From assembly GCF_032191835.1 (NCBI RefSeq), contig NC_083224.1:1240001-1304000 (forward strand): DNA of 64,000 bases, in the 5' to 3' direction. This document shows positions 1,428 through 63,200 of this stretch, piece after piece. Origin of the DNA: Heteronotia binoei (Eukaryota). How positions within the stretch are numbered: the first letter of the stretch is position 1; every line of letters begins with the position of its first letter. The position numbers and the translations under genes are program-made. The notes under the pieces were generated by a model. It was not told the DNA's origin. It searched no databases and was given only the letters and a program-made list of their open reading frames with translations.

Positions 1428-10560
<9,133 letters not shown>

Positions 10561-21136: not shown

Positions 21137-23356
21137 GAGAACATAAGAACATGAGAGAAGTCATGATGGATCAGGCCAGTGGCCCCTCCAGTCCAACACT
21201 CTATGTCACATAAGAGAAGCCCTGTTGGATCAGGCCAGTGGCCCCTTCAGTCCAACACTCTGTGTCACATAAGAACATAAAATAAGTCATCTTGGATCAG
21301 GCCAATGGCCCATCCAGTCCAACACTCTGTGTCACATAAGAGAAGCCCTGTTGGATCAGGCCAATGGCCCCTTCAGTCCAACACTGTGTCACATAAGAAC
21401 ATAAGAGAAGCCCTGTTGGATCAGGCCAGTGGCCCCTCCAGTCCAAAACTCTGTGTCACATAAGAACATAAGATAAGCCCTGTTGGATCAGGCCAATGGC
21501 CCCTTCAGTCCAACACTGTGTCACATAAGAACATAAGAGAAGCCCTGTTGGATCAGGCCAATGGCCCCTCCAGTCCAACACTCTGTGTCACATAAGAGAA
21601 GCCATGTTGGATCATGCCAATGGTCCCTCCAGTCCAAACTCTATGTCATATAAGAAAAACCATGTTGGATCAGGCCAGTGGCCCCTCTAGTCCAACACTC
21701 TGTGTCACATAAACATAAGAGAAGCCCTGTTGGATCAGGCCAGTGGCCCCTCCAGTCCAACACTCTGTCTCACGTAAGAACATAAGAGAAGCCCTGTTGG
21801 ATCAGGCCAATGGCCCATCCAGTCCAACAATCTGTGTCACATAAGAACATCAGAGAAGCCCTGTTGGATCAGGCCAATGGCCCCTCCAGTCCAACATTCT
21901 GTGCCACACATAAGACCATAAGAGAAGCCCTGTTGGATCAGGCCAATGGCCCCTCCAGTCCAACACTCTGTGCCACACATAAGACCATAAGAGAAGCCCT
22001 GTTGGATCAGGCCAATGGCCCATCCAGTCCAACAATCTGTGTCACATAAGAACATCAGAGAAGCCCTGTTGGATCAGGCCAATGGCCCCTCCAGTCCAGC
22101 ACTCTGTGCCACACATAAGACCATAAGAGAAGCCCTGTTGGATCAGGCCAATGGCCCATCCAGTCCAACAATCTGTGTCACACATAAGACCATAAGAGAA
22201 GCCCTGTTGGATCAGGCCAATGGCCCCTCCAGTCCAACACTCTGTGCCACACATAAGACCATAAGAGAAGCCCTGTTGGATCAGGCCAATGGCCCCTCCA
22301 GTCCAACACTCTGTGTCACATAAGAACGTAAGAGAAGCTCTGTTGGATCAGGCCAGTGGCCCCTCCAGTCCATCACTCTGTGTCACATAAGAACATAGGA
22401 GAAGCCATGTTGGATCAGGCCAGTGGCCCCTCCAATCCAACACTCTGTCTCATATAAGAACATAAGAGAAGCCCTGTTGGATCAGGCCGATGGCCCATCC
22501 AGTCCAACACTCTGTCACATAAGAACATCAGAGAAGCCCTGTTGGATCAGGCCAGTGGCCCATCCAGTCCAACACTCTGTGTCACATAAGAACATAAGAG
22601 AATCCCTGTTGGATCAGGCCAATGCCCCTCCAGTCCAACACTCTGTGTCACATAAGAGAAGCCATGTTGGATCATGCCAATGGTCCCTCCAGTCCAAACT
22701 CTATGTCATATAAGAAAAACCATGTTGGATCAGGCCAGTGGCCCCTCTAGTCCAACACTCTGTGTCACATAAGAACATAAGAAAAGCCCTGTTGGATCAG
22801 GCCAGTGGCCCCTCCAGTCCAACACTCTGTGTCACATAAGAACATAAGAGAAGCCCTGTTGGATCAGGCCAGTGGCCCCTCCAGTCCAACACTCTGTGTC
22901 ACATAAGAACATAAGAGAAGCCCTGTTGGATCAGGCCGATGGCCCATCCAGTCCAACCCTCTGTCACAAAGAACATAGAGAAGCCCTGTTGGATCAGGCC
23001 AGTGGCCCATCCAGTCCAACACTCTGTGTCACATAAGAACAGAAGAGAAGCCCTGCTGGATCAGGCCAATGGCCCCTCCAGTCCAACTCTCTGTGTCACA
23101 TAAGAACATAAGAGAAGCCCTGTTGGATCAGGCCAGTGGCCCCTCCAGTCCAACACTCTGTGTCACATAAGAACATAAGAGAAGCCCTGTTGGATCAGGC
23201 CAACGGCCCATCCAGTCCAACACTCTGTGTCATACAGTGGCAAAAAATTTATATATACACACACACTGTGGCTAATAGCCACTGATGGACCTCTGCTCCA
23301 TATTTTTATCTAAACCCGTCTTGAAGGTGGCTATACTTGTGGCCGCCACCACCTCC
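21137..23356 (-). repeat. Tandem array of CR1 3'-end units (57-70 bp, about 32 copies) plus CR1 3' UTR running into the gap
   Basis: Reverse complement of the 4235-6147 unit; 69-bp GTGCCACACATAAGACC variants at 21860-22320. Confidence 0.93.
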
Positions 23357-23456
23357 NNNNNNNNNNNNNNNNNNNNNNNNNNNNNNNNNNNNNNNNNNNN
23401 NNNNNNNNNNNNNNNNNNNNNNNNNNNNNNNNNNNNNNNNNNNNNNNNNNNNNNNN
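23357..23456. other. Assembly gap (100 N)
   Basis: Run of 100 N directly after a CR1 3' array. Confidence 1.
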
Positions 23457-25283: not shown

Positions 25284-26090
25284 GGAGAATCCTAGAGCAG
25301 GAAGGCACCTCCATGGTCATCTAGCCCAACCCCCTGACCAATGCAGGGAACTCACAAACACCGCCCCCTAAATTCACAGGATCCTCATTGCTGTCAGGTG
25401 GCCATCCAGCCTCTCTTGAAAAACCTCCGAGGAAGGAGAGCCCACCACCTCCAGAGGATAATAGAATTCAGTGGAAGGTGCCTCCAGGGTCATCTAGTCC
25501 AACCCCCTGCACAATGCAAGAAACTCAAAAACCCCTCCCCCTAAATTCACAGGATCTTCATCGCTGCCAGATGGCCATCTAGCCTCTGTTGAAAAACCTA
25601 GAATCCTAGAGTTGGAAGGGACCTCCAGGGTCATCTAGTCCAACCCCCTGCACAATGCAAGAAACTCAAAAACCCCTCCCCCTAAATTCACAGGATCTGC
25701 ATTGCTGTCAGGTGGCCATCCAGACTCTGTTGAAAAACCTCCAAGGAAGGAGAGCCCCCCCCCCCCCCCCAAGGAGAAAGCCTGTTAGAATCATAGAAGA
25801 GTTGGAAAGGACCTCCAGGGTCCTCTAGTCCAACCCCCTGCACAATGCAGGAAACTCACAAACCCCTCCCCCTAAATTCACAGGATCCTCATTGCTGCCA
25901 GATGGCCATCTAGCCTTTGTGGAAAAACCTCCAAGGAAGGAGAGCCCACCACCTCCCGAGGAGGAAGCCTGTTAGAATCATAGAAGAGTTGGAAGGGACC
26001 TCCAGGGTCATCTAGTCCAACCCCTGCACAATGCAGGGAACTCACAAACGATTCCCCCTAAATCCACAGGATCCTCATTACTGTCAGATG
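25284..26090 (-). repeat. Multimer of CR1 (ATTCTAT-tail) 3' ends, about 5 units
   Basis: Repeated GGTCATCTAGTCCAACCCCCTGCACAATGCAGGAAACTC...AAATTCACAGGATC. Confidence 0.88.
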
Positions 26091-26309
26091 GCCCTTTTTG
26101 CAGAAAAAGCACAGCAGGAACTTATTTGCATATTAGGCCACACCCCTGACCCCAAGCCAGCTGGAGCTGCGTTCCTGCTCAAAAAAGCCCTGTCAAAAGG
26201 CCATCTAGCATCTGTTTTAAAAATGTCTCCTCCTCTTTTCTCCCCCGCCCACTGGGAGGGAGGGGCTGCTGAGGACATGGTCCTCAGGAGTGTCTCAGAG
26301 AGCACAGGG

Positions 26310-31650: not shown

Positions 31651-32315
31651 GAGCCAGTTTGGTGTAGTGGTGAAGTGTGTGCGGACTCTTATCTGGGAGA
31701 ACCGGGTTTGATTCCCCACTCCTCCACTTGCACCTGCTGGAATGGCCTTGGGTCAGCCAGAGCTCTCTTATCTGGGAGAACCGGGTTTGATTCCCCACTC
31801 CTCCACTTGCACCTGCTAGCATGGCCTTGGGTCAGCTATAGGCCTGGCAGAGGTTGTCCTTGAAAGGGCAGCTGCTGTGAGAGCCGTCTCAGCCCCACCC
31901 ACCTCACAGGGTGTCTATTGTAGGGGAGGAAGGGAGAGGAGATTGTGAGCCACTCTGAGACTCTTCGGAGTGGAGGGTGGGATATAAATCCAATATCTTC
32001 ATCTACCTCACAGGGTATCTGTTGTGGGGGAGGAAGGGAAAGGAGATTGTGAGCCGCTCTGAGACTCTTGGGAGTGGAGGGCAGGATATAAATCCAATAT
32101 CTTCTTCTACCTCACAGGGTGTCTGTTGTGGGGGAGGAAGGGAAAGGAGATTGTGAGCCGCTCTGAGACTCGTTGGAGTGGAGGGTGGGATATAAATCCA
32201 ATATCTTCATCTACCTCACAGGATGTCTGTTGGGGGGGGGGGAAGGGAAAGGAGATTGTGAGCCGCTCTGAGACGCTTCAGAATGGAGGGCGGGATATAA
32301 ATCCAATATCTTCTC
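31651..32315 (+). repeat. CORE-SINE with 2 head units and about 4 tail units
   Basis: Same 79-bp and 104-bp units as at 28258-29690. Confidence 0.9.
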
Positions 32316-35900: not shown

Positions 35901-38900
35901 ATCTGGGGCTGGAGCAAGACCTGGGAGATGCCTCTAGCTTCTCTTCCCATGCAAAAGTCACGGGGATTAGCTGGGACCTCCGGGGCTGGAACGGACGGTG
36001 TGGGGCAGAGCTCATTCGGGCCTGGGTGTGACCCTCCTTTGCTTGTCTTGCAGACGGACCAGCAGGCGGAAGCCCGGTCCTTCCTCACAGAGGAAATGAT
36101 TGCCGGTGAGTTGGGAGGGGGTGCGTGTGACATCATCGCCCCAGATCTCTGGGTCGAAGGGGAAGTGGAGCAGTTGAGACACCCCGCCCCAGCCCCACCT
36201 GGCCGGGGCTGACCTGCTAGAGGAGGGCTCCCCAAACAGAGCTCACCCAGCTGCCCCTTAGCAGCCCAGCCCCACAAGCACCCTTGAACTACTGCTGGTC
36301 TACAGAAGCCGGGCAGCTGCCAGTGCCTGGGTTCTGCGTGTGTGCCAGCTGCCTGCCCTGCTTGGGCATTGACTGGTTGCCAGGCCCAGGGTGGGAACTC
36401 CTAGAGATTAGGGTCTGGGGAGGACAGGGGCCTTGGGGGAGGGGGAGTTACAATGCCACAAAACCCACCCTTCAAAGCATCCATTTTTCCTAAGAAGGAC
36501 CGATTCCTGTTGTCTGGGAGAGGAGCTATAATTCCTACACGGAGGGACGGTGGCTCAGTGGTGGAGCATCTGCTTGGTAAGCAGAAGGTCCCAGGTTCAA
36601 TCCCCGGCATCTCCAACTAAAAAGGGTCCAGGCAAAGAGGCGTGAAAAACCTCAGCTGGAGACCCTGGAGAGCCGCTGCCAGTCTGAGTAGACAAGACTG
36701 ACTTTAGGGATGGATGGTGGCTCAGTGGTAAAGCATCTGCTTGGTGAGCAGAAGGTCCCAGGTTCAATCCCCGGCATCTCCAACTAAAAAGGGTCCAGGC
36801 AAATAGGTGTGAAAAACCTCAGCTTGAGACCCGGGAGAGCCGCTGCCAGTCTGAGTAGACAAGACTGACTTTGATGGGCCCAGGGAGGTCTGGTTCAGTA
36901 GAAGGCAGCTTCAGATATTCATATGTCCAGGGTTCCTCCTAGGCCCTATGCAGGATGTGGCATAGGGCCACCACTGACGGCTGCTCCTTGCCAGGCCACT
37001 GGCCGTTTAGAAGCATTTCTTCCTTAATGGGTATAAAGAGCCCTGTGGCGCAGAGGGGTCAAGCTACAGTCCTGCAGTTGGAGCCCTCTGCTCATGACCT
37101 GAGTTCGATCCCGTCAGAAGCTGGATTCAGGTAGCCGGCTCGAGGTTGACTCAGCCTTCCATCCTTCCGAGGTCGGTCAAAGGAGTCCCCAGCTTGCTGG
37201 GCGGAAAGTGTAGAGGACTGGGGAAGGCCAGGGCAAACTACCCCGTAAAAAAGTCTGCCATGAAAACGTCGTGAAAGCAGCGTCACCCCAGAGTCGGAAA
37301 CGACTGGTGCTTGCACAGGGGACTACCTTGACCTTTCAGAGCCCCGTGGCGCAGAGTGGTAAAGCTGCAGTACTGCAGTCCAAGCTCTGCTCACAACCTG
37401 AGTTCAGGTAGCCAGCTCAAGGTTGACTCAGCCTTCCGAGGTCGGTCAAATGAGGACCCAGCTTGCAGGGGGGGGAAGCATAGATGACTGGGGAAGGCAA
37501 TGGCAAACCACCCCGTAAAAAGTCTGCAGTGAAAACGTTGTGAAAGCAACGTCACCCCAGTGTCGGAAACGACTGGGGCTTGCACAGGGGACTCCCTTTA
37601 CCTTCCTTAAGGGATGCGATTGGGCTGCTTGGTCTGCTCCACTCCCCACCCCCCTTTCCCGGGTAACTCCGCACTTCCTCTCCTGCAGAGTTCAAAGCCG
37701 CCTTCGACATGTTTGACGCTGATGGTGGCGGGGACATCAGCACCAAGGAGCTGGGTACCGTCATGAGGATGCTGGGCCAGACGCCCACCAAAGAGGAGCT
37801 GGACGCCATCATAGAGGAGGTGGACGAGGATGGTGAGGAGCTGCGGTGATGGGGGGGGGGGGCCGGGAGGGAGGAAGCCGCAGGAGCGGGTGGGGAGAGG
37901 GCAGTGCCCTGACCCCGGCCTGGCCTCTCTCCGCAGGCAGCGGCACCATCGACTTTGAAGAGTTCTTGGTCATGATGGTGCGCCAGATGAAAGAGGACGC
38001 CAAAGGAAAGTCCGAAGAAGAGCTGGCCGAATGCTTCCGCATCTTCGACAGGTGAGGAGAGGCCCCTCCCGTTGGAATGGAAGGATATTTCGAGCACACA
38101 CGCACCCCCCTCGAGGAGGAGGAGACGACGTTCTTCCTCAGGCAGCTGGACGCTCTTTGCTCTAATCCTGGTCTTGGACTTGCAACGCAAGAAGGGCTGG
38201 CCTGTCTCCAGGGATGCCGCTGGGCTCTGCAGCCGGCCTTTATATAGCTTTTGTCCCACCGACAGGAGGAATGCTTGACCTCCCGCCTCTCCCCGCCTGC
38301 TTTCTACCACACAGCAGAGATGGAGTGCAGCCCCTTCCCTGCTAGTGGGGTTGAAAATGTACACTGGTCCCCTTTGCTGAACAGTGGGCTGCTGCCCCCT
38401 GCCAGGCAAGGGTAGGTATGGACAGCCATTTCTGCAGTGCCTCCTCTCTTCCCCCCCTTCCCACGGACGCCTGTCTCAATTCTCCCCTTGGCAGCAGGGC
38501 AGAGAGGGGGCAGAGGGCGCCTCTCCTCAGAGGTTTGGCCTTGACCTCGCCAGGCAGGAGAGGCTGTACGCCAAGAACACAGCAAAGGCAGGCAGGGCTA
38601 CTTGACGACACTCAGGCCCTCTTCTCACATGTTCCAGAGTCTGCCACCGGTCAAGCTGGCAATGCACAACTGCACCTCACATGAAGGAGCCACAGACTTA
38701 GGGACGAAGCCTTAGATCACAAGCAGCCCCCCCACGCCGTTCTGCATGGAGGCCAGAGCATGCTGAAAGGCTGAAGGAGTGGGGCATGTTTAGAAGAAGA
38801 CTGCAGATTTATACCCCGCCCTTTTCTCTGAAAGAGCCCCGTGGCGCAGAGTGGTAAAGCTGCAGTACTGCAGTCCTAAGCTCTGCTCACGACCTGAGTT

Positions 38901-41900
38901 CGATCCCCGGCGGAAGCTGGGTTTTCAGGTAGCCGGCTCGAGGCTGACTCAGCCTTCCGAGGTCGGTCAAATGAGTCCCCAGCTTGCTGGGGGAAAAGCG
39001 TAGATGACTGGGGAAGGCAGTGGCAAACCACCCTGTAAAAAGTCTGCCATGAAAACGTGAAAGCAACGTCACCCCAGAGTCGGAAACAACTCGTGCTTGC
39101 ACAGGGGACCCTTCATTTCCTTCTCTCTGAATCAGAGCGGCTTACAATCTCCATTATCTTCTCCCCACACAAAAGACCCCCCCCTGTGAGGTGGGTGGGG
39201 CTGAGAGTGCTCTCACAGAAGCTGCCCTTTCAAGGACAACCTCTGCCAGAGCTACGGCTGACCCAAGGCCATTTCAGCAGGTGCAAGTGGAGGAGTGGGG
39301 AATCAAAGCCGGTTCTCCCAGATAAGAGTCTGCACACTTAGTGACACCTGGTTAGCCTGGAGAGGAGGCGGCTGAGAGGTGATAGGATCACCATCTTCAA
39401 GTCCTTGAAGGGCTGTCCTAGAGAGGATGGTGTGGAATTGTTTTCTGTGGCCCCAGAAGGGAGGACCAGAACCAACGGGCTGAAATTAAATCAAAAGAGT
39501 TTCTGGCTCAACATTAGCAAGAACTTCCTGACTGTTAAGAGCGGTTCCACAGTGGAACAGGCTTCCTCCTCGGGAGGTGGTGGGCTCTCCTTCCTTGGAG
39601 GTTTTTTAACGGAGGCTGGATGGCCAACTGGCAGCAATGAGGATCCTGTGAATTTAGGGGGAGGGGCTTGTGAGTTTCCTGCATTGTGCAAGGGGCTGGA
39701 CTAGATGACCCTAGAGGTCCCTTCCAACTCTATAATTCTAAGTTCCCACAGGCTTCCTCCTCGGGAGGTGGTGGTCTCTCCTTCCTTGGAGGTTTTTAAG
39801 CAGAGGCTAGATGGCCATCTGACAGCAATGCAGATCTTGTGAATTTAGGGGGAGGGGTTTGTGAGTTCCCTGCATTGTGCAGGGGGTTGGACTAGATGAC
39901 CCTAGAGGTCCCTTCCAACTCTATAATTCTAAGTTCCCACAGGCTTCCTCCTCGGGAGGTGGTGGTCTCTCCTTCCTTGGAGGTTTTTAAGCAGAGGCTG
40001 GATGGCCATCTGACAGCAATGAAGATCTTGTGAATTTAGGGGGAGGGGCTTGTGAGTTTCCTGCATTGTGCAGGGGGTTGGACTAGATGACCCTGGAGAT
40101 CCCTTCCAACTCCTCTATGATTCTACCAGGCTTCCTCCTCAGGAGGTGGTGGGCTCTCCTTCCTTTCTAAACAGAGGCTTGGATGGCCATCTGACAGCAA
40201 TGAAGATCCTGTGAATTTAGGGGGAGGTGTTTGTGAGTTTCCTGCATTGTGCAGGGGTTGGACTAGATGACCCTGGAGGTCCCTTCCAACTCTATAATTC
40301 TAAGTTCCCACAGGCTTCCTCCTCGGGAGGTGGTGGGCTCTCCTTCCTTGGAGGTTTTTAAGCAGAGGCTAGATGGCCACCTGACAGCAATGAGGATCCT
40401 GTGAATTTAGGGGGATGTGTTTGTGAGTTTCCTGCATTGGGCGGGGGGGTTGGACTAGATGACCCTGGAGATCCCTTCCAACTCCTCTATGATTCTAACA
40501 GTCTTCCTCCTTGGGAGGTGGTGGGCTCTCCTTCCTTGAAGGTTTTGAAACAGAGGCTGGATGTCCATCTGACAGCGATGAAGATCCTGTGAATTTAAGG
40601 GGAGGCGTTTGTGAGTTTCCTGCATTGTGCAGGGGGTTGGACTAGATGGCCCTGGGGGGTCCCTGCCTGTTCAGGCTGGACAGACATGCCAAGGGAAAGC
40701 AATACTCCCCTGCTGGCCCAGGCCTGGACGTGCTCAACGGCCCCTCCTAACGCTGTGACCTCTTCTCCCCACTGCCTCACCAGGAACGCAGACGGCTACC
40801 TGGATGCCGAGGAGCTGATTGAGATCTTCCGGGCGTCTGGTGAGACCGTCACCGAGGAGGAGGTCGACTGGCTCATGAAGGATGGAGACAAAAACAACGA
40901 TGGCCGGATTGACTTTGACGGTAGGTGATGGGCTTGGCCCAGTGCCAGTGCTCCGTACCCATCTCGGCACCCAGCCTCACAGCTTAGGGGGCTCTGGGCT
41001 GATGCAAGAGGGCATCTTGGGGGCCCCCAAGGAGAAACAGACGAGGTGCACGACTCCTGGCCCTTTTAGCTGCTGTGAGAAGCCACGGAATACTGCAGAA
41101 ATGTGACTGTCCAGGATGAGTCCCGTGACAGAATACCGAGATGAAGAGACCTAAACTGGTTGACCTCAGCAGATCTTGGCACCTTAGCAGGGTCGACTCT
41201 GGCTAGGACCAATACTCTAAGACGGGGGTGTCGAACTCTTTTGTTGGGAGAGCCAGATCCGACACAAAAGAGAGCCTGCTGGGCCAGGCCATGTCAGGTT
41301 GGGCCGAGCCATGTTGAGGCGGGGCCATCCGTGTACCTATTTAAGACTAGGTAGCAGAGACACAAACTTTATAAAGGACACAAACACAATTTTAAAAATC
41401 TTAAAACGATAGTATTCGTTGGTCTGAAAGATGCTTTCTTTGTATCTCTCCCACGGGACCCAGAGAACTGGGCAAAGGAAGCTCTGGCTCTTTCCTTCCT
41501 TCCCCAGGAGAGGGAAGGAGCCTCAGCCAATAGAAAGGAGAAGCTTGGCTTAGTAGCTCTGCTGTGCAATCGATGAAGCCTGGCAAAGCAAGCTGTTATG
41601 CAGAAGGAAGCAAGATACAGGGAGAAGGAAGCAGATGACAGCCAGTTGCTCAGAGGCCGGATAGGGGCCTGATTCGGCTCCTGGACCGCATGTTTGACAC
41701 CCTTGCTCTTAGAGTCTTGTGAGCAAAAATTCTACTTTGTGAGCTCCTGGCATCAAAGTTGTGAGCTGCTGCATAAATCAGTGTGCTCTGGGATCATCCT
41801 TCCTGAGCTAAAACAAAAAATGTGTGAGCCGGAGGCTAAAAAACCGGTGAGCCGGCTCACGCTAACTCAGCTTAAAGGGAACGCTGGTTAGAACGTGGAC

Positions 41901-42719: not shown

Positions 42720-43585
42720 ATCTTCAAGTCCTGGAAGGGCTGTCCTATACAGGATGGTGCGGAATTGTTTTCTGTGGCCTCAGGTCAGACCAGAACCAGC
42801 GGGCTGAAATTAAATCAAGAGTTTCCGACTCAACATGAGGAAGAACTTCCTGACCGTTAGAGCGGTTTCTCAGTGGAACAGGCTTCCTCCTCGGGAGGTA
42901 GTGGGCTCTCCTTCCCTGGAGGTTTTTCAACGGAGGCTAGATGGCCATCTGACAGCAATGAAGATCCTGTGAATGTAGGGGGAGGTGTTTGTGAGTTTCC
43001 TGCATTGTGCAGGGGGTTGGACTAGATGACCCTGGATGTCCCTTCCAACTCTAGGATTCTATGCTTTAACTGGGCTCTCCTTTCTTGGAGGTTTTTAAAC
43101 AGAGGCTAGATGGCCATCTGACAGCAATGAAGATCCTGTGGATTGAGGGGGAGGGGTTTGTGAGTTCCCTGCATTGTGCAGGGGGTTGGACTAGATGGCT
43201 CTGAAGGTCCCTTCCAACTCCTCTGTGATTCTAACAGGCTTCCTCCTTGGGAGGTAGTGGGCTCTCCTTCCCTGGAGGTTTTTAAACAGAGGCTAGATGG
43301 CCTTCTGACAGCAATGAGGATCCTGTGGATTGAGGGGGAGGTGTTTGTGAGTTTCCTGCATTGTGCAAGAGGTTGGACTAGATGACTCTGGAGGTCTCTT
43401 CCAACTCTATGGTTCCTTCCTTCCTTCCATCTTCCTCGGGAGGTGGTGAGCTCTCCTTCCTTGGAGGTTTTTAAAGAGAGGCTAGATGGCCATCTGACAG
43501 CGATGAAGATCCTGTGAATTTAGGGGGAGGTGTTTGTGAGTTTCCTGCATTGTGCAGAGAGTTGGACTAGATGACCCTGGAGGTC
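42720..43585 (+). repeat. CR1 3' end multimer, about 4 units
   Basis: Same 185-bp unit as at 39500-40650. Confidence 0.88.
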
Positions 43586-43589
43586 CCTT

Positions 43590-44110
43590 CCAACTCTATG
43601 AGTGTGGTGCAGCAGCAAAAAAGGCACACAGTCACAAGATGTCATCGTCCTGTTGTACACTGCATTGGTCAGGCCACCCCTGGAGTCTTGTGTGCAGTTC
43701 TGGAGGCCTCCCTTCAAGAAGGATGTGGCCAGAATGGAGCGGGTCCAGAGGAGAGCGATGGGTGCTCAGGGGCCTGGAGACCAAGAAGCCCATCTGAGGA
43801 AAGGCAGAGGGACCTGGGGAGGTTCTGTCTGGAGAAAAGGAGGTGTGGGGGGGGGGGGGCAGAACTGCTCTCTTGAAGTCTCTGAAGGGCTGCTGTCCCT
43901 TAGAGGAGGGCAGGGAGCTGTTCCCGTTGGCAGCAGAGGAGAGGACTCGCAATAACAGGCCTAAATTAAGAGTCGGCAGGTATCGACTGGATCTTAGGAA
44001 AAACTTTTTTTTACAGTCAGAGCTGTTCAACAGTAGAACCAGCTACTCAGGGAGCTGCGGAACTCCCCCTCCCTGGCAGTCCTCAAGCAGCAGCAGGACA
44101 AACCCATCAG
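43590..44110 (+). mobile_element. Older CR1 ORF2 fragment
   Basis: [39 protein letters not shown]. Confidence 0.8.
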
Positions 44111-44967
44111 GCGTGCTCTAGCCCAGGGCTGGCCAAACTTGCTTAAAGTAAGAGCCACGCAGAAGAAACAGATGTTTGAGAGCCTCAAGACGTGAACATC
44201 AGATGTTTGAGACCCGTAAGATAGGGAGGGAGATAAGGGGGAGACAGGTGGAAAGAAAGCAACTTTAACTCTAAATGCACTCTCCAAGCCACTGGCTGGC
44301 TTGGCGAAGTGATTTAAAGAGAGAAAGGCCTTCTCCGAGCCAGTGGGAGCTTGGAGAGCCACAAAGTATGTGTGGAAGAGCCACGTGTGGTGGGGGTTGG
44401 ACTAGATGGCCTCTCCGTCCCCTTCCTACTCTGATTCCTGCTTTACAACCACCCAAGGGAGAGCTCAAACTTTTGCCATTTCCTCTTCTTTGCGGCTGAG
44501 GGAGGACCGCTGCAAGAGCAACAAGAGGAAACCACACCCAAAGCTGCCCGGGCTCTGGCAGAATTCCCACAGCCTCCCCTCCCAGTGAATGCCCACAGAA
44601 GCAGCCTGCATGAGTGCTGGGGCTCCTGGAAACGGCTGCTCAAGCCAATGGCCCTGCCACATCCATTCTTGGGCCCCCCCGCTTCTGAAGGTCACGTTTG
44701 GGCTCTGCAAAGGGGACAAAGATGAGCTGGCAAACTTAGAGAGTGTTGCCACTCAAGTGAAGGGGAGAAAGAAGAAGACCACCGTAGATTTACAGCCCGC
44801 CCTTCTCTCTGAATCAGAGTCTCAGAGCAGCTCACGTTCTCCCTTCCTTTTCCTCCCCCACCCCACAACAGACATCCTGTGAGAAGGATGGGGCTGAAAG
44901 AGCTCTCCCAGAAGCTGCCCTTTCAAGGACAACTCCTGTGATAGCTCTGGCTGACCCAAGGCAATTC

Positions 44968-45770
44968 ATAAGAACATAAGAGAAGCCCTGTTGGATCAGG
45001 CCAGTGGCCCCTCCAGTCCAACACTCTGTGTCACATAAGAACACAAGAGAAGCCCTGTGGGATCAGGCCAATGGCCCCTCCAGTCCAACACTCTGTCACA
45101 GAAGAACATAAGAGAAGCCCTGTTGGATCAGGCCAATTGCCCATTCAGTCCAACACTCTGTGTCACATGAGAACATAAGAGAAGCCCTGTTGGATCAGGC
45201 CAATGGCCCATTCAATCCAACACTCTGTGTCATATAAGAACATAAGAGAAGCCATGTTGGATCAGGCCAGTAGCCCCTCCAGTCCAACACTCTGTGTCAC
45301 ATAAGAACATAAGAGAAGCCCTGTTGGATCAGGCCAATGGCCCATTCAATCCAACACTCTGTGTCACATAAGAGAAGCCATGTTGGATCAGGCCAGTGGC
45401 ACATTCAGTCCAACACTCTGGGTCACACAGTGGCCAAAAAATTTATACACACACACACAGTGGCTAATAGCCACTGATGGACCTCTGCTCCATATTTTTA
45501 TCCAATCCCCTCTTAAAGCTGGCTATGCTTGTAGCCGCCACATGTTAATCCCCCTTTGGGTGAAGAAGTGCTTCCTTTTATCCGTTTTAACCTGGCTGCT
45601 CAGCAATTTCATTGAATGCCCACGAGTTCTTGTATTGTGAGAAAGGGAGAAAAGTACTTCTTTCTCTACTTTCTCCATCCCATGCATTATCTTGTAAACC
45701 TCTATCAAGTCACCCTGCAGTTGACGTTTCTCCAAGCTAAAGAGTCCCAAGCGTTTTAACCTTCCTTCAT
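44968..45770 (-). mobile_element. 5'-truncated CR1 with about 7 x 67-bp 3'-end units, inserted into a CORE-SINE
   Basis: LGLFSLEKRQLQGDLIEVYKIMHGMEKVEKEVLFSLSHNTRTRGH...; SINE halves at about 44780-44965 and 45772-45857. Confidence 0.88.
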
Positions 45771-46241: not shown

Positions 46242-54593
<8,352 letters not shown>

Positions 54594-55012
54594 CGCGCTG
54601 CTCTCCTCCTCCTCCCGCTGCAGCAGCTGCCCGCGTTTGAATGTTGCAAAGCTCCTGCTCCGCAGCCAATGGGCGCCCGCCTCGCTTTCGACCGGCCCAA
54701 TGGGAGCGCGCGGCGTCGCGGCCCCCACGCGAAACGGACCCCGGCCGCGCCGTCATTGGCCGGCGGGAGAACGCTGAGGGCTCCCATTGGCCGGTGGCGT
54801 TCGGAGGGTGCCCCCGCGAGAACCAATGAGGCTCGCCTTCCGAGCCCCGCAGGGAGCGTGGGGGAGCATTCACACGTGACGCCGAGCTCTCCCGTTCACT
54901 CCTATGGAGAAGCTTCCAGGGAACACGTCACATCTGTCCAGTTTTATTAGTATTACTATTACTTACTTTTCGAAGGCATTAATTTCAAAATAGAGATACA
55001 CAATCATTAGCC

Positions 55013-58000
55013 ATAAGAACATAAGAGAAGCCCTGTTGGAACAGGCCAGTGGCCCCTCCAGTCCAACACTCTGTGTCACATAAGAACATAAGAGAAGCCC
55101 TGTTGGATCAGGCCAGTGGCCCATCCAGTCCAACACTCTGTGTCACATAAGAACATAAGAGAAGCCCTGTTGGATCAGGCCAGTGGCCCCTCCAGTCCAA
55201 CACTCTGTGTCACATAAGAACAGAAGAGAAGCCCTGTTGGATCAGGCCAGTGGCCCCTCCAGTCCAACACTCTGTGTCACATAAAAACATAAGAGAAGCC
55301 CTGTTGGATCAGGCCAGTGGCCCCTCCAGTCCAACACTCTGTGTCACATAAGAACAGAAGAGAAGCCCTGTTGGATCAGGCCAGTGGCCCCTCCAGTCCA
55401 ACACTCTGTGTCACATAAGAACATAAGAGAAGCCCTGTTGGATCAGGCCAGTGGCCCCTCCAGTCCAACACTCTGTGTCACATAAGAACATAAGAGAAGC
55501 CCTGTTGGATCAGGCCAGTGGTCCCTCCAGTCCAACACTCTGTGTCACATAAGAACATAAGAGAAGCCCTGTTGGATCAGGCCAGTGGTCCCTCCAGTCC
55601 AACACTCTGTGTCACATAAGAACATAAGAGAAGCCCTGTTGGATCAGGCCAGTGGCCCCTCCAGTCCAACACTCTGTGTCACATAAGAACATAAGAGAAG
55701 CCCTGTTGGATCAGGCCAGTGGCCCCTCCAGTCCAACACTCTGTGTCACATAAGAACATCAGAGAAGCCCTGTTGGATCAGGACAATGGCCCCTCCAGTC
55801 CAACACTCTGTGTCACATAAGCACATAAGAGAAGCCCTGTTGGATCAGGCCAGTGGCCCCTCCAGTCCAACACTCTGTGTCACATAAGAACATAAGAGAA
55901 GCCCTGTTGGATCAGGCCAGTGGCCCCTCCAGTCCAACACTCTGTGTCACATAAGAACATAAGAGAAGCCCTGTTGGATCAGGCCAGTGGTCCCTCCAGT
56001 CCAACACTCTGTGTCACATAAGAACATAAGAGAAGCCCTGTTGGATCAGGCCAGTGGTCCCTCCAGTCCAACACTCTGCGTCACATAAGAACATAAGAGA
56101 AGCCCTGTTGGATCAGGCCACTGGCCCCTCCAGTCCAACACTCTGTGTCACATAAGAACATAAGAGAAGCCCTGTTGGATCAGGCCAATGGCCCCTCCAG
56201 TCCAACACTCTGTGTCCCATAAGAACAGAAGAGAAGCCCTGTTGGATCAGGCCAGTGGCCCATTCAGTCCAACACTCTGTGTCACATAAGAACATAAGAG
56301 AACCCCGGTTGGATCAGGCCAGTGGCCCCTCCAGTCCAACACTCTGTGTCACATAAGACCATAAGAGAAGCCCTGTTGGATCAGGCCAGTGGCCCCTCCA
56401 GTCCAGCACTCTGTGTCACATAAGACCATAAGAGAAGCCCTGTTGGATCAGGCCAGTGGCCCCTCCAGTCCAACACTCTGTGTCACATAAGAACAGAAGA
56501 GAAGCCCTGTTGGATCAGGCCAGTGGCCCATCCAGTCCAACACTCTGTGTCACATAAGAACATAAGAGAAGCCCTGTTGGATCAGGCCAGTGGCCCATCC
56601 AGTCCAACACTCAGTGTCACATAAGAACATAAGAGAAGCCCTGTTGGATCAGGCCAGTGGCCCCTCCAGTCCAGCACTCTGTGTCACATAAGAACATAAG
56701 AGAAGCCCTGGTGGATCAGGCCAGTGGCCCCTCTAGTCCAACACTCTGTGTCACAGAAGAGCATAAGAGAAGCCCTGGTGGATCAGGCCAATGGTCATCC
56801 AGTCCAACACTCTGTGTCACAGAAGAACATAAGAGAAGCCCTGGTGGATCAGGCCAGTGGCCCCTCCAGTCCAACACTCTGTGTCACAGAAGAACATAAG
56901 AGAAGCCCTGGTGGATCAGGCCAGTGGCCCCTCCAGTCCAACACTCTGTGTCACAGAAGAACATAAGAGAAGCCCTGGTGGATCAGGCCAGTGGCCCCTC
57001 CAGTCCAACACTCTGTGTCACATAAGAACATAAGAGAAGCCCTGGTGGATCAGGCCAGTGGCCCCTCCAGTCCAACACTCTGTGTCACAGAAGAACATAA
57101 GAGAAGCCCTGTTGGATCAGGCCAGTGGTCCCTCCAGTCCAACACTCTGTGTCACATAAGAACATAAGAGAAGCCCTGTTGGATCAGGCCAGTGGCCCCT
57201 CCAGTCCAACACTCTGTGTCACATAAGAACATAAGAGAAGCCCTGTTGGATCAGGCCAGTGGCCCCTCCAGTCCAACACTCTGTGTCACATAAGAACATC
57301 AGAGAAGCCCTGTTGGATCAGGACAATGGCCCCTCCAGTCCAACACTCTGTGTCACATAAGCACATAAGAGAAGCCCTGTTGGATCAGGCCAGTGGCCCC
57401 TCCAGTCCAACACTCTGTGTCACATAAGAACATAAGAGAAGCCCTGTTGGATCAGGCCAGTGGCCCCTCCAGTCCAACACTCTGTGTCACATAAGAACAT
57501 AAGAGAAGCCCTGTTGGATCAGGCCAGTGGTCCCTCCAGTCCAACACTCTGTGTCACATAAGAACATAAGAGAAGCCCTGTTGGATCAGGCCAGTGGTCC
57601 CTCCAGTCCAACACTCTGCGTCACATAAGAACATAAGAGAAGCCCTGTTGGATCAGGCCACTGGCCCCTCCAGTCCAACACTCTGTGTCACATAAGAACA
57701 TAAGAGAAGCCCTGTTGGATCAGGCCAATGGCCCCTCCAGTCCAACACTCTGTGTCCCATAAGAACAGAAGAGAAGCCCTGTTGGATCAGGCCAGTGGCC
57801 CATTCAGTCCAACACTCTGTGTCACATAAGAACATAAGAGAACCCCGGTTGGATCAGGCCAGTGGCCCCTCCAGTCCAACACTCTGTGTCACATAAGACC
57901 ATAAGAGAAGCCCTGTTGGATCAGGCCAGTGGCCCCTCCAGTCCAGCACTCTGTGTCACATAAGACCATAAGAGAAGCCCTGTTGGATCAGGCCAGTGGC

Positions 58001-59080
58001 CCCTCCAGTCCAACACTCTGTGTCACATAAGAACAGAAGAGAAGCCCTGTTGGATCAGGCCAGTGGCCCATCCAGTCCAACACTCTGTGTCACATAAGAA
58101 CATAAGAGAAGCCCTGTTGGATCAGGCCAGTGGCCCATCCAGTCCAACACTCAGTGTCACATAAGAACATAAGAGAAGCCCTGTTGGATCAGGCCAGTGG
58201 CCCCTCCAGTCCAGCACTCTGTGTCACATAAGAACATAAGAGAAGCCCTGGTGGATCAGGCCAGTGGCCCCTCTAGTCCAACACTCTGTGTCACAGAAGA
58301 GCATAAGAGAAGCCCTGGTGGATCAGGCCAATGGTCATCCAGTCCAACACTCTGTGTCACAGAAGAACATAAGAGAAGCCCTGGTGGATCAGGCCAGTGG
58401 CCCCTCTAGTCCAACACTCTGTGTCACAGAAGAACATAAGAGAAGCCCTGGTGGATCAGGCCAGTGGCCCCTCCAGTCCAACACTCTGTGTCACAGAAGA
58501 ACATAAGAGAAGCCCTGGTGGATCAGGCCAGTGGCCCCTCCAGTCCAACACTCTGTGTCACATAAGAACATAAGAGAAGCCCTTTTGGATCAGGCCAATG
58601 GCCCCTCCAGTCCAACACTCTGTGTCACATAAGAACATAAGAGAAGCCCTGTTGGATCAGGCCAGTGGCCCCTCCAGTCCAGCACTCTGTGTCACATAAG
58701 AACATAAGAGAAGCCCTGTTGGATCAGGCCAGTGGCCCCTCCAGTCCAGCACTCTGTGTCACATAAGAACATAAGAGAAGCCCTGTGAGATCAGGCCAAT
58801 GGCCCATCCAGTCCAACACTTTGTGTCACATAAGAACGTAAGAGAAGCCCTGTTGGATCAGGCCAGTGGCCCATCCAGTCCAACACTCTGTGTCACATAA
58901 GAGAAGCCCTGTTGGATCAGGCCAATGGTCCACTCAGTCCAACACTATGTGTCACATAAGAACATAAGAGAAGCCCTGTTGGATCAGGCCAATGGCCCAT
59001 CCAGTCCAACACTCTGGGTCACATAAGAGAAGCCCTGTTGGATCAGGCCAATGGCCAATCCAGTCCAACACTCTGTGTCA
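55013..59080 (-). repeat. 67-bp CR1 3'-end satellite, about 60 copies, with a 1540-bp higher-order duplication
   Basis: Unit ATAAGAACATAAGAGAAGCCCTGTTGGATCAGGCCAGTGGCCCCTCCAGTCCAACACTCTGTGTCAC. Confidence 0.97.
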
Positions 59081-59765
59081 CACAGTGACCAAGAAACCCA
59101 GGTGCCATCAGGAGAGCCATCAGTGGGGCCAGGACACCAGAAGCCCTCCCACTGTGCCCCCCTCCCAAGCATCAAGAATACAGAGCATCACTGCCCCAGA
59201 CAGAGAGTTCCATCAATACACTGTGGCTAATAGCCACTGATGGACTTCTGCTCCATATAAGAATATAAGAGAAGCCATGTTGGATTAGGCCAATGGCCCA
59301 TCCAGTCCAACTGTCTGTGTCACACAGTGGTCAAAAACCGAGGTGCCATCAGGAGGTCCATCATTGGGGCTAGAAGCCCTCCCACTGTGCCCCCCCTAAA
59401 GCACCAAGAATACAGAGCATCACTGCCCCAGACATAAGAACACAAGAGAAGTCCTGTTGGATCAGGCCCATGGCCCATCCAGTCCAACAATCTGTGTCAC
59501 ACAGTGGCCAAAAAACCCAAATGGCATCAGGAGGTCCATCATTGGGACTAGAAGCCCTCCCATTGTGCCCTCCCCCCAAGCACCATGAATACAGAGCATC
59601 CCTGCTCCAGACACAGAGTTTCATCAATACGCTGTGGCTAATAGCCACTGATGGACCTCTGCTCCATATTTTTATCTCACCCCCTCTTAAAGCTGCCTAT
59701 GCTTGTAGCCGCCACCACCTGTGGCAGTGAATTCCATGTGTGAATCACCCTTTGGGTGAAGGACT
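59080..59765 (-). mobile_element. Stacked 5'-truncated CR1 3' ends of different lengths
   Basis: Three head-to-tail 3' UTR copies, the last reaching ORF2-end sequence (CCCTTTGGGTGAAG). Confidence 0.8.
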
Positions 59766-60008
59766 CCTTCACTCTGGGGGGCAGCCTGTGAGGAAGTCCA
59801 GCTCCCCCAAGAAGGAAGAGGGCTACATTTCCATGGGGCAGCTACAGGTGTTTGTTTCCTGCAGAGACAAGACACGCAAGTTCTCTCACCCCACCCGCAG
59901 CACAGCCAAGAGGCCGCTGAACACCCATCCAGAGACTTCCCTTCCCCTCCCACCCAAAAAGACACAGAAGGTACCAGTTCAAGCAGAGGTGATTTTCAAG
60001 TAGAATAG

Positions 60009-60280: not shown

Positions 60281-63200
60281 CTAGGGAGAGTTACGGAAGG
60301 GGGGAAGCAGCTCTCCTTGGAGCAACACGCTTGGAGGAAACCTCCTTGCAGCCTCGAAGGGGACTCTCCCGCTGCCTCCTCTGAGCTCTGCCCCCCCCCC
60401 CCCAGCCCTCCTGCCCGAGGCCCGTCTCTCACCTGTACTCATCGCTGGCCACCAGATCCTGGATATCCTCTTCTAACAGAAGATAAGCCTAGGAGAGAAG
60501 AGAGGCACAAGGACCTGAGGCACCAGAAGAGCTGTTTTGCCCTCCTGCGCTAGAAGGCCACTGTGGAGAGCCAGTGTGGCCTAGTGGTTAGAGAGCGGGA
60601 CAAGCAGCTGGGAGATCCAGGCTTGAATCCCCTCTCTGCTCACCGGGTGACCCTGGGCCAGTCACGCACACATACTTTACAGAGGTGTGAGGATAAAATG
60701 GACAAGAGGAGAACGGACGCCCTTTACGGCCAGGGGCCTGCAGAACTTTGGGATCGCCTCTCGCCATATGAACTCCCCCCCCCCCGGGCTCTGAGGTCTG
60801 CTGCTCAACATCTCCTCTTAGTCCCTGCTCCTAAGGACGCCTGGCTGGCTTCAACGAGGGACAGGGCCTTTTCGGTCCAGGCCCCTACCTGGTGGAATGA
60901 GCTCCTGCTGGAGATCCGGGCCCTGCGGGACTTATCCAGGTTTCGCAGGGCCTGTAAGACGGAGTTCTTCCGCCAGCCTTTTAAATGATCCAGTGGGCGT
61001 CCTTGAAAGTCATCCCTTCCCTCAGCATTTCCCCACTGTGGTGTTCTGCTATGCAACTAGCCATCGGCTGCATGCGGTTTACCGCCTATGTCTAAAAGAT
61101 TGTTTCCTCTGCTGCTCCTGCTTGGTCACGTCTGTTTTTATGACATTATTTAAACCCTGTTGTTTTATTGTTGTAAGCTGCCCTGAGCCCGCTTGCGGGA
61201 GAGAAATCGAAAAATTAAATTAAATTAAAGCCATTCTGGAGATAGAAATGAAGTAAGCAAATAGATTCCTCTTGCCCAGGAAGGGAAGCGACTGTCAGAG
61301 ACCCATCAGGACTCTTCCTGAAAGAGCCCCAACCACCTCCGCCCCCTGCAAAGCTGGATTCCTGCCCCAGCTCCAGCGCACTCACCATCTTCCCTCCGGT
61401 GGCCCTCATATGCTGCTGCTCCGCCAGCCAGTGCTTGTCTTGAGGGTCGGCTGCGTACTGCAGAGAGGGGGCATGGTTAAAAAACGTCCGCTGCTGGTTC
61501 TCGGGCCCCAGCAGCCCCACAAGGGGCTCCTGCCCAAAGACCATGCAAAGCTGCACGTGGCCCCCTGGCAGGCTGCTGCGCAATCCTTCCCTCCCATCCT
61601 TCCCTTTGCAAACGGGGTCTGAGCAGGGGGGCCGCAAGGAAGGGGTCTCCTTTGCCAGCAAGAAGGCAGCACGAAGCCACTGAAACTGAGGAGGCGAGGC
61701 CACACCACCCCGCTCCAAGTTCACAAGGACATCGGAAAATGGCCCCTCCAGTCCAACACTCTGTGTCACACAGTGGCCAAAACCCAGGGGCCATCAGGAG
61801 GGCCATCAGTGGGGCCAGGACACTAGAAGCCATCCCACTGTTGCCCCCCCCCCCCCAAGCACCAAGAATTCAGAGCATTCCTGCCCCAGAAATAAGAACA
61901 TAAGAGAAGCCCTGTTGGATCAGGCCAATGGCCCCTTCAGTCCAACACTCTGTGTCACATAAGAACATAAGAGAAGCCCTGTTGGATCAGGCCAATGGCC
62001 CCTTCAGTCCAACACTCTGTGTCACACAGTGGCCAAAACCCAGGGGCCATCAGGAGGTCCATCAGTGGGGCCAGGACACTAGAAGCCATCCCACTGTTGC
62101 TCCCCCCAAGCACCAAGAATTCAGAGCATCCCTGCCCCAGAAATAAGAACATAAGAGAAGCCCTGTTGGATCAGGCCAATGGCCCATCCAGTCCAACACT
62201 CTGTGTCACACAGTGACCGATATATGTGTGTGTGTGTGTATATATGTATGTATACACACACACACTGTGGCTAATAGCCACTGATGGACTTCTGCTCCAT
62301 ATTATTATCCAATCCCCTCTTGAAACTGGCTATGCTTGTAGCCGCCACCACCTCCTGTGGCAGTGAATTCCACATGTTAATCACCCTTTGGGTGAAGGAC
62401 TTCCTTTTATCCATTTTAACCTGTTTTAATCAGTTCAGAATTTGAAAATGAGCATGCACAAGTGATAAGCAGACTGCTGTATAAGGAATTTGGATCAGCT
62501 TATGAAAAAGCTGGAAACAGTGAAACATGATGAGAAGCTGGCAATCACGTGAAGGTGATTTTTTCCCTTTAGAGCCAATATCTGGGGCTGGAGTCTGTAC
62601 TTCAAAAAGAATCTGGAGTGAAACCCCCATTGGAGACTGAAAAGTTTCTTCAGAGTCGCCCAGTGGAATGGACTATTGATAAAGGGACTTTCTTTTTCAC
62701 TTTTTGATATTTCTGTATGAATTCATTTGCTGTTGAAGCATCTATGAAATGAAAAGCAATTTTCCATATTCTAGCAAGGGATTTATTCTTAACACAGTTG
62801 TTCTTTGGTAGCATATCGGTACTGTGTTGCCACTGTGTTGTTCTTTTTTCTTCTCTTCTCAACACTTGAGTGACAGAAGACAGCGATTGAGGAGGGACAC
62901 AGCCAGCACCAGTGTCTCGATGGGCCGGGCCAGGCCAGCCAGCCTTTGGGGCCAAGGTGCTCTCTGCAGCTGCCCTGCTCTGGGCCACGTGGGAGGGGTT
63001 TGTGTGGCTTGGGGGCAGAGCACCTGCTTGGCATACAGAAGATCCACACTTTGGTCCCTTAGCATCTCCAGCTACAAGGATCAGGGTGTGTTACAGCTGG
63101 AGAGCTGCTGCCAGTCTGAGTAGACCATGCTGAGCTGGATGGAACCAGGGTGTGAGTCATTCTAAGGCAACGTCAAGGGTCCGGGTGTGTCCAGCTACCT

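What the first reader, a model, noticed from the sequence alone, without database searches (positions are those of the whole stretch)
55013..59765. CR1 LINE 3' ends amplified into kilobase satellites: a recurrent tail-multimerisation system
Seen: six separate CR1 insertions (4235-6147, 21137-23232, 44968-45425, 47780-48045, 55013-59080, 61738-62200), in both orientations, end in head-to-tail repeats of the same last ~67 nt. Copy number runs from about 4 to about 60, always with the same junction TTCTTAT|GTGACACAG. The native context is CACTGTGTGACAC, so tail and re-entry point share a TGT microhomology. Established: CR1 3' ends carry a short stem-loop and an 8-bp terminal repeat needed for target-primed reverse transcription. 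Inference: either the RT repeatedly re-anneals and re-copies its own 3' recognition module (telomerase-like stuttering), or new 5'-truncated copies target old tails, or an active master already carries an expandable 3' VNTR. Each route seeds satellites from a LINE tail, and every unit keeps the RT recognition signal.
Basis: partly seen in the sequence, partly recalled or inferred. Interest (0 to 1): 0.8.

Follow-up and report, generated by a model that had tools for sequence, protein, structure and literature searches.

The report
CR1 LINE tails grown into minisatellites
Six copies of a gecko CR1 retrotransposon really do end in arrays of 4 to 61 copies of their last 67 bases, but these look like the LINE counterpart of the SINE-derived satellites already described in squamates: a short multi-tail end is copied along with the element and then expands locally by ordinary DNA-level duplication, so no special reverse-transcriptase stuttering system is needed.

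Summary
All six CR1-A 3' ends in the window carry head-to-tail tails: 29, 30, 7, 4 and 61 units of mostly 67 bp, plus one mixed 184/67-bp array. The re-entry point GTGACACAG is constant. The junction is not: 79% of spacings are 67 bp and the rest are 59, 62-66 or 69 bp. Two further re-entry points lie about 180 and 250 nt upstream.

Three layers explain it.
1. Each junction type joins the exact CR1 3' terminus to an internal point. This tail-to-internal signature indicates a retrotransposition-coupled origin. One array (61738-62424) mixes two UTR subfamilies, so that event was intermolecular.
2. Oligomeric tails are inherited. A 252-bp, four-unit block (59-67-59-67) is 96.4% identical at two unrelated loci.
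3. Kilobase size comes from DNA-level block duplication. One block of 23 units (1,493 bp) is duplicated with a single mismatch, and there are 4-, 10- and 14-unit repeats.

Two controls in the same window argue against a tail-specific system. A second CR1 family does the same at five loci. An internal, non-tail 79-bp SINE segment shows one junction at three loci with 2, 5 and 47 copies.

Earlier notes of this scan report the same 67-bp arrays on other pieces of this genome. This is a new member of a known kind. Array lengths were not checked against long reads.

The parts
3824..4235 (+). Array 1: 5'-truncated CR1-A body (ORF2 C-terminus and short-UTR variant with a (TG)n(TA)n microsatellite) up to the native junction CCACTGT|GTGACACAG
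   Evidence: Translation. Alignment. Start position.
4236..6147 (+). Array 1: 29 tail units (three of 59 bp, one of 62 bp, the rest 67 bp). It contains block repeats at lags of 4, 10 and 14 units, and the terminal unit is degenerate.
21137..23233 (-). Array 2: 30 tail units. It is the most heterogeneous array (59 to 69 bp), and a 117-bp compound unit occurs twice, 15 units apart.
23234..23356 (-). Array 2: CR1-A short-UTR body, cut off by a 100-N assembly gap at 23357-23456 (gap left untouched)
44968..45426 (-). Array 3: 7 tail units (59, 67, 67, 67, 65, 67, 67 bp)
45427..45767 (-). Array 3: CR1-A body (short UTR) inserted into a SINE. It starts at the same CR1 position as array 1. A possible 5-bp target-site duplication, ATGAA, flanks the body plus the whole array.
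47766..48045 (+). Array 4: 14 nt of UTR (TTTTTGGCCACTGT) followed by 4 tail units of 67 bp
55013..59081 (-). Array 5: 61 tail units. The proximal units are 59-67-59-67 bp. The segment 55551-57043 is repeated at 57091-58583 (lag 1540 bp, 23 units) with 1 mismatch in 1,493 bp.
59082..59763 (-). Array 5 upstream part: CR1-A body with the long-UTR variant and its first tail, then two longer tail-to-internal units with re-entry at about -180 and about -250
61738..62209 (-). Array 6: tail, a 184-bp long-UTR unit, a 67-bp unit, a 189-bp long-UTR unit, and a 3'-truncated tail. This forms a 251-bp higher-order repeat present 1.9 times at 95% identity.
62210..62423 (-). Array 6: CR1-A body of the short-UTR (microsatellite) variant. 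This is a different subfamily from the units that follow it.
39557..40664 (+). Comparison: a second CR1 family (CR1-B, with the classical hairpin and ATTCTATG tail) forming a tail-to-internal array of 191-bp units, 5.9 copies. Similar arrays lie at 6951-7356 (-), 25472-26093 (-), 42902-43600 (+) and 46944-47290 (+).
50471..54256 (-). Control: a 79-bp internal (non-tail) segment of a tRNA-derived SINE present in 47-48 copies. The same junction GCTCTC|TTATCTGG occurs at 28296-28687 (5 copies) and 31686-31836 (2 copies).

Best explanation
This is a dispersed, LINE-derived minisatellite family, built in three steps.

Step 1 (inferred). In the history of this CR1 subfamily, a few retrotransposition-coupled events joined the exact 3' terminus of one copy (..TTCTTATG) to an internal point of another 5'-truncated copy. 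Each join uses 2-nt microhomology. The mechanism was either insertion of a truncated copy into an existing tail or an RT template switch onto the 3' end of a second RNA. The result was elements with two or more tails.

Step 2 (shown for part of the arrays). Source elements with such oligomeric tails retrotransposed. Independent insertions therefore share the same junction and even the same order of unit variants.

Step 3 (shown). Each inserted oligomer then behaved as an ordinary minisatellite. It grew to kilobase size by DNA-level unequal exchange or replication slippage that duplicates blocks of 4 to 23 units. The interior became homogenised while the edge units stayed older and more degenerate.

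The RT recognition hairpin is carried along as a passenger. Nothing indicates that it drives the expansion.
For: Retrotransposition-coupled origin:
- Every junction type has its left side at the CR1 3' terminus, while the right side varies. CR1-A has three re-entry points, at -59/67, about -180 and about -250.
- CR1-B has at least six re-entry points at five loci.
- This is the tail-to-internal class described for non-LTR elements in Drosophila (PMC5932611).
- Array 6 joins a short-UTR body to long-UTR units, so that event involved two different templates.

Inheritance of oligomeric tails:
- Array 1 units 2-5 and array 5 units 1-4 match at 243 of 252 positions without gaps. They share the 59-67-59-67 order and a CACATAG variant.
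- Every other register costs at least 21 edits.
- The two loci lie 55 kb apart in opposite orientation, and their flanks are not homologous.
- In CR1-B, the junction ATTCTA|ACAGG (including two substituted copies, |CCAGG and |ACAGT) always goes with a 3-nt insertion in the tail: 6 of 6 such tails in 4 loci against 0 of 15 other tails.
- An alternating pair of CR1-B junction types recurs at the 39.5-kb and 46.9-kb loci.

Growth in situ at the DNA level:
- Array 5 repeats 18 consecutive, mutually different unit types at a lag of 23 units. This is 1,493 bp with one mismatch.
- Array 1 repeats blocks at lags of 4, 10 and 14 units.
- Array 2 has a 117-bp compound unit twice, 15 units apart.
- All six arrays keep the native UTR-to-tail junction, and their bodies are only 14 to about 680 nt long. 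This is unlikely (my rough estimate is P about 0.003, assuming truncation points fall uniformly) if the arrays had their present length when copied by a low-processivity RT.
- Edge units are more diverged than interior units in arrays 1 and 5.

Not tail-specific:
- The 79-bp internal SINE segment shows the same pattern.
- SINE-derived satellites of this kind are described in squamates, and they are most diverse in geckos (PMC10702118).
Against: - Unit divergence within arrays 1 to 4 (7-10%) is about as large as divergence between the CR1 bodies at different loci (8-9.5%). Many units are therefore as old as the insertions, so a larger share of each array may have been present at insertion than I assume.
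- Only one pair of arrays shows clear collinearity. The similarity in unit order between arrays 2 and 3 is weak.
- Ectopic gene conversion between arrays could mimic inheritance.
- The near-perfect 1.5-kb duplication in array 5 could be an assembly artefact. No long reads were available.
- The window holds no full-length source element, so a multi-tail master has not been seen directly.
Confidence: 0.58

Rival explanations
1. RT stuttering at each insertion. During target-primed reverse transcription the CR1 RT copies the tail, jumps back to the 3' end of the same or another tail RNA, and repeats this many times. The arrays would then be born at roughly their present size.
For: Non-LTR RTs do this in vitro. 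[quoted passage not shown] Every unit ends at the exact 3' terminus with 2-nt microhomology. Units in arrays 1 to 4 are about as diverged as the insertions are old.
Against: Units copied from one tail would be identical at birth. Exact duplication of blocks of 4 to 23 mutually different units must therefore be later DNA events. The variant order shared by arrays 1 and 5 is not expected from independent stuttering. Sixty jumps followed by about 690 nt of further synthesis is implausible for an RT whose copies here retain only 14 to about 680 nt of body. A non-tail SINE segment forms equal arrays.
Confidence: 0.12
2. Serial targeted insertion as the main builder. New, severely 5'-truncated copies repeatedly insert into the octamer tail of older copies, adding one unit at a time.
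For: Tail-to-internal tandems from double insertion are documented for non-LTR elements (PMC5932611). Array 6 is a composite of two UTR subfamilies. Some CR1-B junctions contain a few extra bases, as would be left between two nearby insertions. The possible target-site duplication of array 3 overlaps a TATG-like target.
Against: Truncation at the very same nucleotide in about 100 independent events is unlikely. Block duplications and array-specific variants show local copying rather than import. The route can explain the seeds but not 30 to 61 units.
Confidence: 0.12
3. Purely DNA-level origin. The first duplication at each locus also arose by replication slippage between short TG repeats, independently of retrotransposition. 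The arrays would then be ordinary minisatellites that happen to lie in a LINE.
For: The SINE 79-bp array has internal-to-internal boundaries lying in a short CTCT direct repeat. The window is full of TE-derived arrays.
Against: For nine or more junction types in two CR1 families, one boundary sits at or within 16 nt of the element's 3' terminus, while the other boundary ranges over 250 nt. The composite array 6 contains a UTR segment that its own body lacks.
Confidence: 0.1
4. Assembly artefact. The arrays are inflated by mis-assembly of a short repeat.
For: There is a near-perfect 1.5-kb internal duplication in array 5, and a 100-N gap lies 124 bp from array 2.
Against: The arrays contain 17 to 30 distinct unit variants in a non-periodic order. 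Six loci have unique flanks. RNA reads cover tail-to-unit junctions contiguously. Other windows of the genome were noted to hold the same arrays.
Confidence: 0.04

Closest known systems
SINE-derived satellites (sSats) of squamates (Vassetzky et al. 2023, Mob DNA, PMC10702118)
   Same: Both are dispersed arrays of a retroposon segment, with one longer terminal unit that continues into the rest of the element. Both show several unit variants per genome, longer arrays that are more homogeneous, and greatest diversity in geckos. The window itself holds such arrays (79-bp and 104-bp SINE units).
   Different: The source here is an autonomous CR1 LINE. The unit is exactly its 3' terminal hairpin plus octamers. 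That paper does not treat LINE-derived arrays.
Tail-to-internal tandems of non-LTR retrotransposons and the double-insertion model (McGurk and Barbash 2018, PMC5932611)
   Same: The junctions join the 3' end of one copy to an internal point of a 5'-truncated copy. Such dimers are proposed as seeds that expand into satellites by unequal exchange.
   Different: In Drosophila these are mostly low-frequency dimers with scattered junctions. Here a few junction types are fixed in the family, spread by retrotransposition and expanded to 61 units.
Microsatellite seeding by CR1-L3 and Rex LINE tails in snakes (Pasquesi et al. 2018, PMC6050309)
   Same: The 3' end of a squamate CR1-type LINE spreads a tandem-repeat seed across the genome with every insertion.
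   Different: The seeded repeat there is a 5-mer at the very tail. Here it is a 59-67-bp module that includes the hairpin.
Satellites derived from LINE 3' regions: chicken HinfI repeat (CR1 3' UTR plus part of ORF2), common cetacean satellite (L1 3' end), Drosophila 18HT (HeT-A 3' region); listed in PMC9659126
   Same: In each case the tandem repeat unit is derived from the 3' non-coding end of a LINE.
   Different: Those are single large satellite blocks. Here there are many short to kilobase arrays, each still attached to its own CR1 copy, so the early stages are visible.
R2 reverse transcriptase template jumping (PMC11371274)
   Same: It is a biochemical route that places 3' UTR copies head to tail.
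   Different: It has been shown for R2 in vitro and in engineered cells, not for CR1. It is not needed to explain most of the array length here.

Membership tests
CR1 LINE (3' end) | ORF2 C-terminal region of CR1 type lies immediately upstream | tested here: met
   The peptide ..[31 protein letters not shown] lies upstream of the arrays. It is homologous to the C-terminus of the second, classical CR1 family in the window (BLASTP E = 3e-8). Assigning that motif to CR1 rests on my own knowledge. No RT domain is present in these truncated copies.
CR1 LINE (3' end) | 3' hairpin followed by an 8-bp microsatellite (ATTCTRTG in nearly all amniote CR1s; PMC8665684, PMC4316615) | tested here: met
   CR1-B ends in ..GGTTGGACTAGATGACCCTGGAGGTCCCTTCCAAC TCTATGATTCTA... 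CR1-A has the homologous TGTTGGACTGGATG..TCCAACA stem and two octamers, CTCTTATG and TTCTTATG, which are a variant octamer.
TE-derived dispersed satellite (sSat-like) | Four or more tandem units of a retroposon segment, with a terminal unit that extends into the rest of the element, at several loci | tested here: met
   Six loci hold 4 to 61 units, and each continues 5' into the CR1 UTR and ORF2.
TE-derived dispersed satellite (sSat-like) | Growth and homogenisation by DNA-level unequal exchange (higher-order repeats, degenerate edges) | tested here: met
   Blocks are duplicated at lags of 4, 10, 14 and 23 units. Edge units are more diverged than interior units in arrays 1 and 5.
Tail-to-internal tandem by double insertion or template switch | One side of each junction is at the element's exact 3' terminus and the other is at variable internal points | tested here: met
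   CR1-A has three re-entry points and CR1-B has at least six. All left sides lie at the octamer tail or within 16 nt of it.
Tail-to-internal tandem by double insertion or template switch | The two joined copies come from separate templates | tested here: met
   This is met for one locus only. In array 6 a short-UTR body is followed by long-UTR units.
Telomerase-like RT stuttering | Arrays are produced de novo at each insertion from a single-tail template | not testable with these tools
   Testing this needs young polymorphic insertions or a retrotransposition assay. Indirect evidence, namely shared unit order and block duplications, speaks against it as the main route.

The most novel reading that the evidence does not exclude
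The CR1 reverse transcriptase of this gecko lineage itself creates tandem tails, by end-to-end template jumping onto tail RNAs during target-primed reverse transcription. It would do so recurrently and at preferred microhomology points. Under this reading, two CR1 families, and the SINEs that use CR1-type tails, continually seed new minisatellites. This would be an RT-driven generator of satellite DNA.
Probability: 0.15. Interest if true: 0.7.

Novelty: new member of a known kind. Interest (0 to 1): 0.38.

Why it matters
The window catches satellite birth from a LINE at several stages side by side: dimers, 4-7-unit oligomers, and 2-4-kb arrays with higher-order structure. Each stage is still attached to its parent element. 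This makes the seed-then-expand model for TE-derived satellites directly testable in a vertebrate. It also extends the SINE-derived satellites described in squamates to their LINE partners.

There is a practical consequence. CR1 3' ends in this genome cannot be treated as single-copy anchors for dating or presence/absence markers. Kilobase arrays of a strong hairpin may also matter for replication and assembly.

It does not by itself reveal a new enzymatic mechanism.

Tried and rejected
- Segmental duplication as the reason for six similar loci: rejected. A self-BLAST of the window found no homology beyond the TE arrays.
- Rfam: no family matches the tail. The only hits are tRNA matches in SINE heads.
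- ESM Atlas search with the CR1-A C-terminal peptide: it returned only unnamed clusters and was uninformative.
- Literature search for the unit sequence, and for CR1 or LINE tail satellites in lizards and geckos: nothing specific was found.
- Sequencing runs: no long-read DNA run was offered, only small DNA contig sets and RNA-seq.
- RNA reads laid on 58750-59850:
  - They showed coverage of both strands in equal measure.
  - Many tails were followed by heterogeneous flanks.
  - Tail-to-unit junctions were covered contiguously.
  - The short-UTR variant was dominant.
  - These reads mostly reflect genomic copies inside host transcripts. They say nothing about array length or about an active master.
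- Unit-order alignment between all array pairs with shuffling: only array 2 versus 3 (nominal p = 0.006) and array 1 versus 5 (p = 0.044) stood out. The array 2 versus 3 signal did not hold up against generic consensus-like arrays.
- Target-site duplications: only two possible 5-bp pairs were found (arrays 1 and 3). Results for the other loci are inconclusive.
- MFE folding of single units gave no significant stability over shuffles (z = -1.1 to -1.6).
Full report
**Observation**

- 4348-6148 (+, 27 copies)
- 21208-23232 (-, 31 copies)
- 44967-45427 (-, 7 copies)
- 47782-48045 (+, 3.9 copies)
- 55012-59082 (-, 61 copies, 95% matches)
- 61738-62210 (-)

I read each array in the sense of the element and split it at a fixed anchor. 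The arrays hold 29, 30, 7, 4, 61 and 4 tail units. Upstream of every array lie three things: the C-terminal end of a CR1-type ORF2 (..[31 protein letters not shown]), a 3' UTR, and the native junction CCACTGT|GTGACACAG.

The unit is the last 59-67 nt of the element. It contains a stem TGTTGGA/TCCAACA around an inner GGCC/GGCC stem, followed by one or two octamers (CTCTTATG, TTCTTATG). A hairpin plus an 8-bp microsatellite is the published hallmark of CR1 3' ends (PMC8665684 and PMC4316615). No CR1-A 3' end in the window has a single tail. A self-BLAST shows no homology between the loci outside the repeats, so they are separate insertions.

- The re-entry point GTGACACAG is constant, but the junction is not always the same. 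Of 129 spacings, 102 are 67 bp. The rest are 59 bp (one octamer), 62-66 bp, 69 bp, or compound.
- Two more tail-to-internal junctions lie upstream of the large array: TTCTTATG|TCTGGGGCAG (about -180) and TTCTTAT|ATGGAGCAG (about -250).
- The sixth locus is mainly a 251-bp repeat of a 184-bp unit plus a 67-bp unit.
- Microhomology at the junctions is 2 nt.
- Only 70 of 116 units keep both stems.

**Context in the same window**

- A second CR1 family (CR1-B) has the classical hairpin GGTTGGACTAGATGACCCTGGAGGTCCCTTCCAAC and an ATTCTATG tail. It forms tail-to-internal arrays of about 190 bp at five loci, with at least six different re-entry points. Its C-terminal peptide is homologous to that of CR1-A (E = 3e-8).
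- A tRNA-derived SINE carries two expanded segments. One is a 104-bp unit that includes its 3' end. The other is a 79-bp internal unit.
- The 79-bp unit has the same internal-to-internal junction (GCTCTC|TTATCTGG) in three separate SINE copies, with 5, 2 and 47 units.
- An earlier follow-up note of this scan identifies the genome as a gecko's and files such a 79-bp array under the SINE-derived satellites of squamates. That class is described in PMC10702118.

**Origin of the junctions**

In both CR1 families, one side of every junction type sits at the element's 3' terminus or within 16 nt of it. The other side ranges over about 250 nt. This asymmetry is the signature of target-primed reverse transcription, which has a fixed 3' end and a variable 5' truncation. 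It matches the tail-to-internal tandems described for non-LTR elements (PMC5932611).

At 61738-62424 the body belongs to the short-UTR subfamily, in which a microsatellite replaces about 120 nt. The following 184/189-bp units contain that 120-nt segment. The first junction there therefore joined two different templates. Either a truncated copy inserted into an old tail, or the RT switched between RNAs. Template jumping of a non-LTR RT onto further 3' UTR RNAs is documented for R2 (PMC11371274). I cannot separate these two routes.

**Inheritance of oligomeric tails**

Units 2-5 of array 1 (4295-4546) and units 1-4 of array 5 (59081-58830, minus strand) align without gaps at 243 of 252 positions. 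They share the 59-67-59-67 length order and a CACATAG variant in the third unit. Every other register costs at least 21 edits. Units of 59 bp occur nowhere else in these two arrays apart from unit 1 of array 1.

In CR1-B, the junction ATTCTA|ACAGG (two of the six copies carry substitutions, |CCAGG and |ACAGT) is always linked to a 3-nt insertion in the preceding tail. This holds for 6 of 6 such tails in four loci against 0 of 15 other tails. An alternating pair of junction types also recurs at two loci. These shared architectures at unrelated sites are best explained by source elements that already carried several tails.

**Growth of the arrays**

- In array 5, 18 consecutive and mutually different unit types recur at a lag of 23 units. 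At the base level, 55551-57043 equals 57091-58583 with one mismatch in 1,493 bp.
- Array 1 repeats blocks at lags of 4, 10 and 14 units, with exact runs of 184-281 bp.
- Array 2 has a 117-bp compound unit twice, 15 units apart.
- Blocks of different units can only be copied after those differences arose. These are therefore DNA-level duplications, from unequal exchange or slippage.
- All six arrays retain the native UTR-to-tail junction, and their bodies are only 14 to about 680 nt long. If the arrays had their present length in the template, truncation should often have fallen inside them. My rough estimate, assuming truncation points fall uniformly, is P about 0.003.
- Edge units are more diverged than interior units in arrays 1 and 5.
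- Possible 5-bp target-site duplications (TAAAA and ATGAA) flank the body plus the whole array at two loci.

**Caveats**

- Unit divergence within arrays 1 to 4 (7-10%) is similar to body divergence between loci (8-9.5%). A good part of these arrays is therefore old, and the size at insertion is uncertain.
- Only one array pair is clearly collinear.
- Gene conversion between arrays is not excluded.
- No long-read DNA run was offered. The array lengths, and the near-perfect duplication in particular, are unverified.
- RNA reads from the same species label cover tails and tail-to-unit junctions on both strands equally. They also show many tails followed by heterogeneous flanks. They reflect genomic copies within transcripts and do not identify an active master.

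**Comparison and verdict**

Satellites derived from LINE 3' regions are known: the chicken HinfI/CR1 repeat, the cetacean common satellite from L1, and 18HT from HeT-A (PMC9659126). Also known are microsatellite seeding by squamate CR1 tails (PMC6050309), SINE-derived satellites in geckos (PMC10702118), and the model in which a double insertion expands into an array (PMC5932611).

I found no paper that describes this 67-bp CR1-tail family. Earlier first-stage notes of this scan report the same arrays on several other pieces of the genome, so the arrays are not rare.

I file this as a new member of a known kind. Telomerase-like stuttering is neither needed nor excluded for the seeds, and it is unlikely to be the source of kilobase length.

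Noticed in passing
window 39557-40664, 6951-7356, 25472-26093, 42902-43600, 46944-47290: A second, classical CR1 family forms about 190-bp tail-to-internal arrays at five loci, with at least six re-entry points. One junction type is strictly linked to a 3-nt tail insertion. A two-junction higher-order unit is shared by two loci.
   Followed up: partly
window 28296-29683 and 31686-32313: Two copies of one SINE each carry both an expanded 79-bp internal segment and an expanded 104-bp 3' segment. The copies are 92% identical over 638 bp, which suggests a source SINE with two internal VNTRs.
   Followed up: partly
window 4236-4294: The first unit of array 1 has GATCAGGCC-ATT-GGCCTGATC, a perfected palindrome in place of GGATGGGCC..GGCCTGATC. 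This looks like a templated quasi-palindrome correction of the hairpin.
   Followed up: no
window 3824 and 45767: Two independent CR1-A copies begin at the same nucleotide of ORF2, about 340-410 nt upstream of the tails. This may be a preferred truncation point or the 5' end of a short non-autonomous derivative.
   Followed up: no
window 19538-19795, 34673-34919, 36541-36872: tRNA-derived SINEs occur as head-to-tail dimers with periods of 133-167 bp. Their heads score as tRNA in Rfam.
   Followed up: no
window 40690-40900: An exon encodes an EF-hand peptide (..[38 protein letters not shown]..) that resembles troponin C or calmodulin. It lies directly after a CR1-B array.
   Followed up: no
window 17592-18040: A C/A-rich low-complexity tract of about 450 bp (imperfect (CA)n with CCCC runs) lies in a region of 64% GC.
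   Followed up: no
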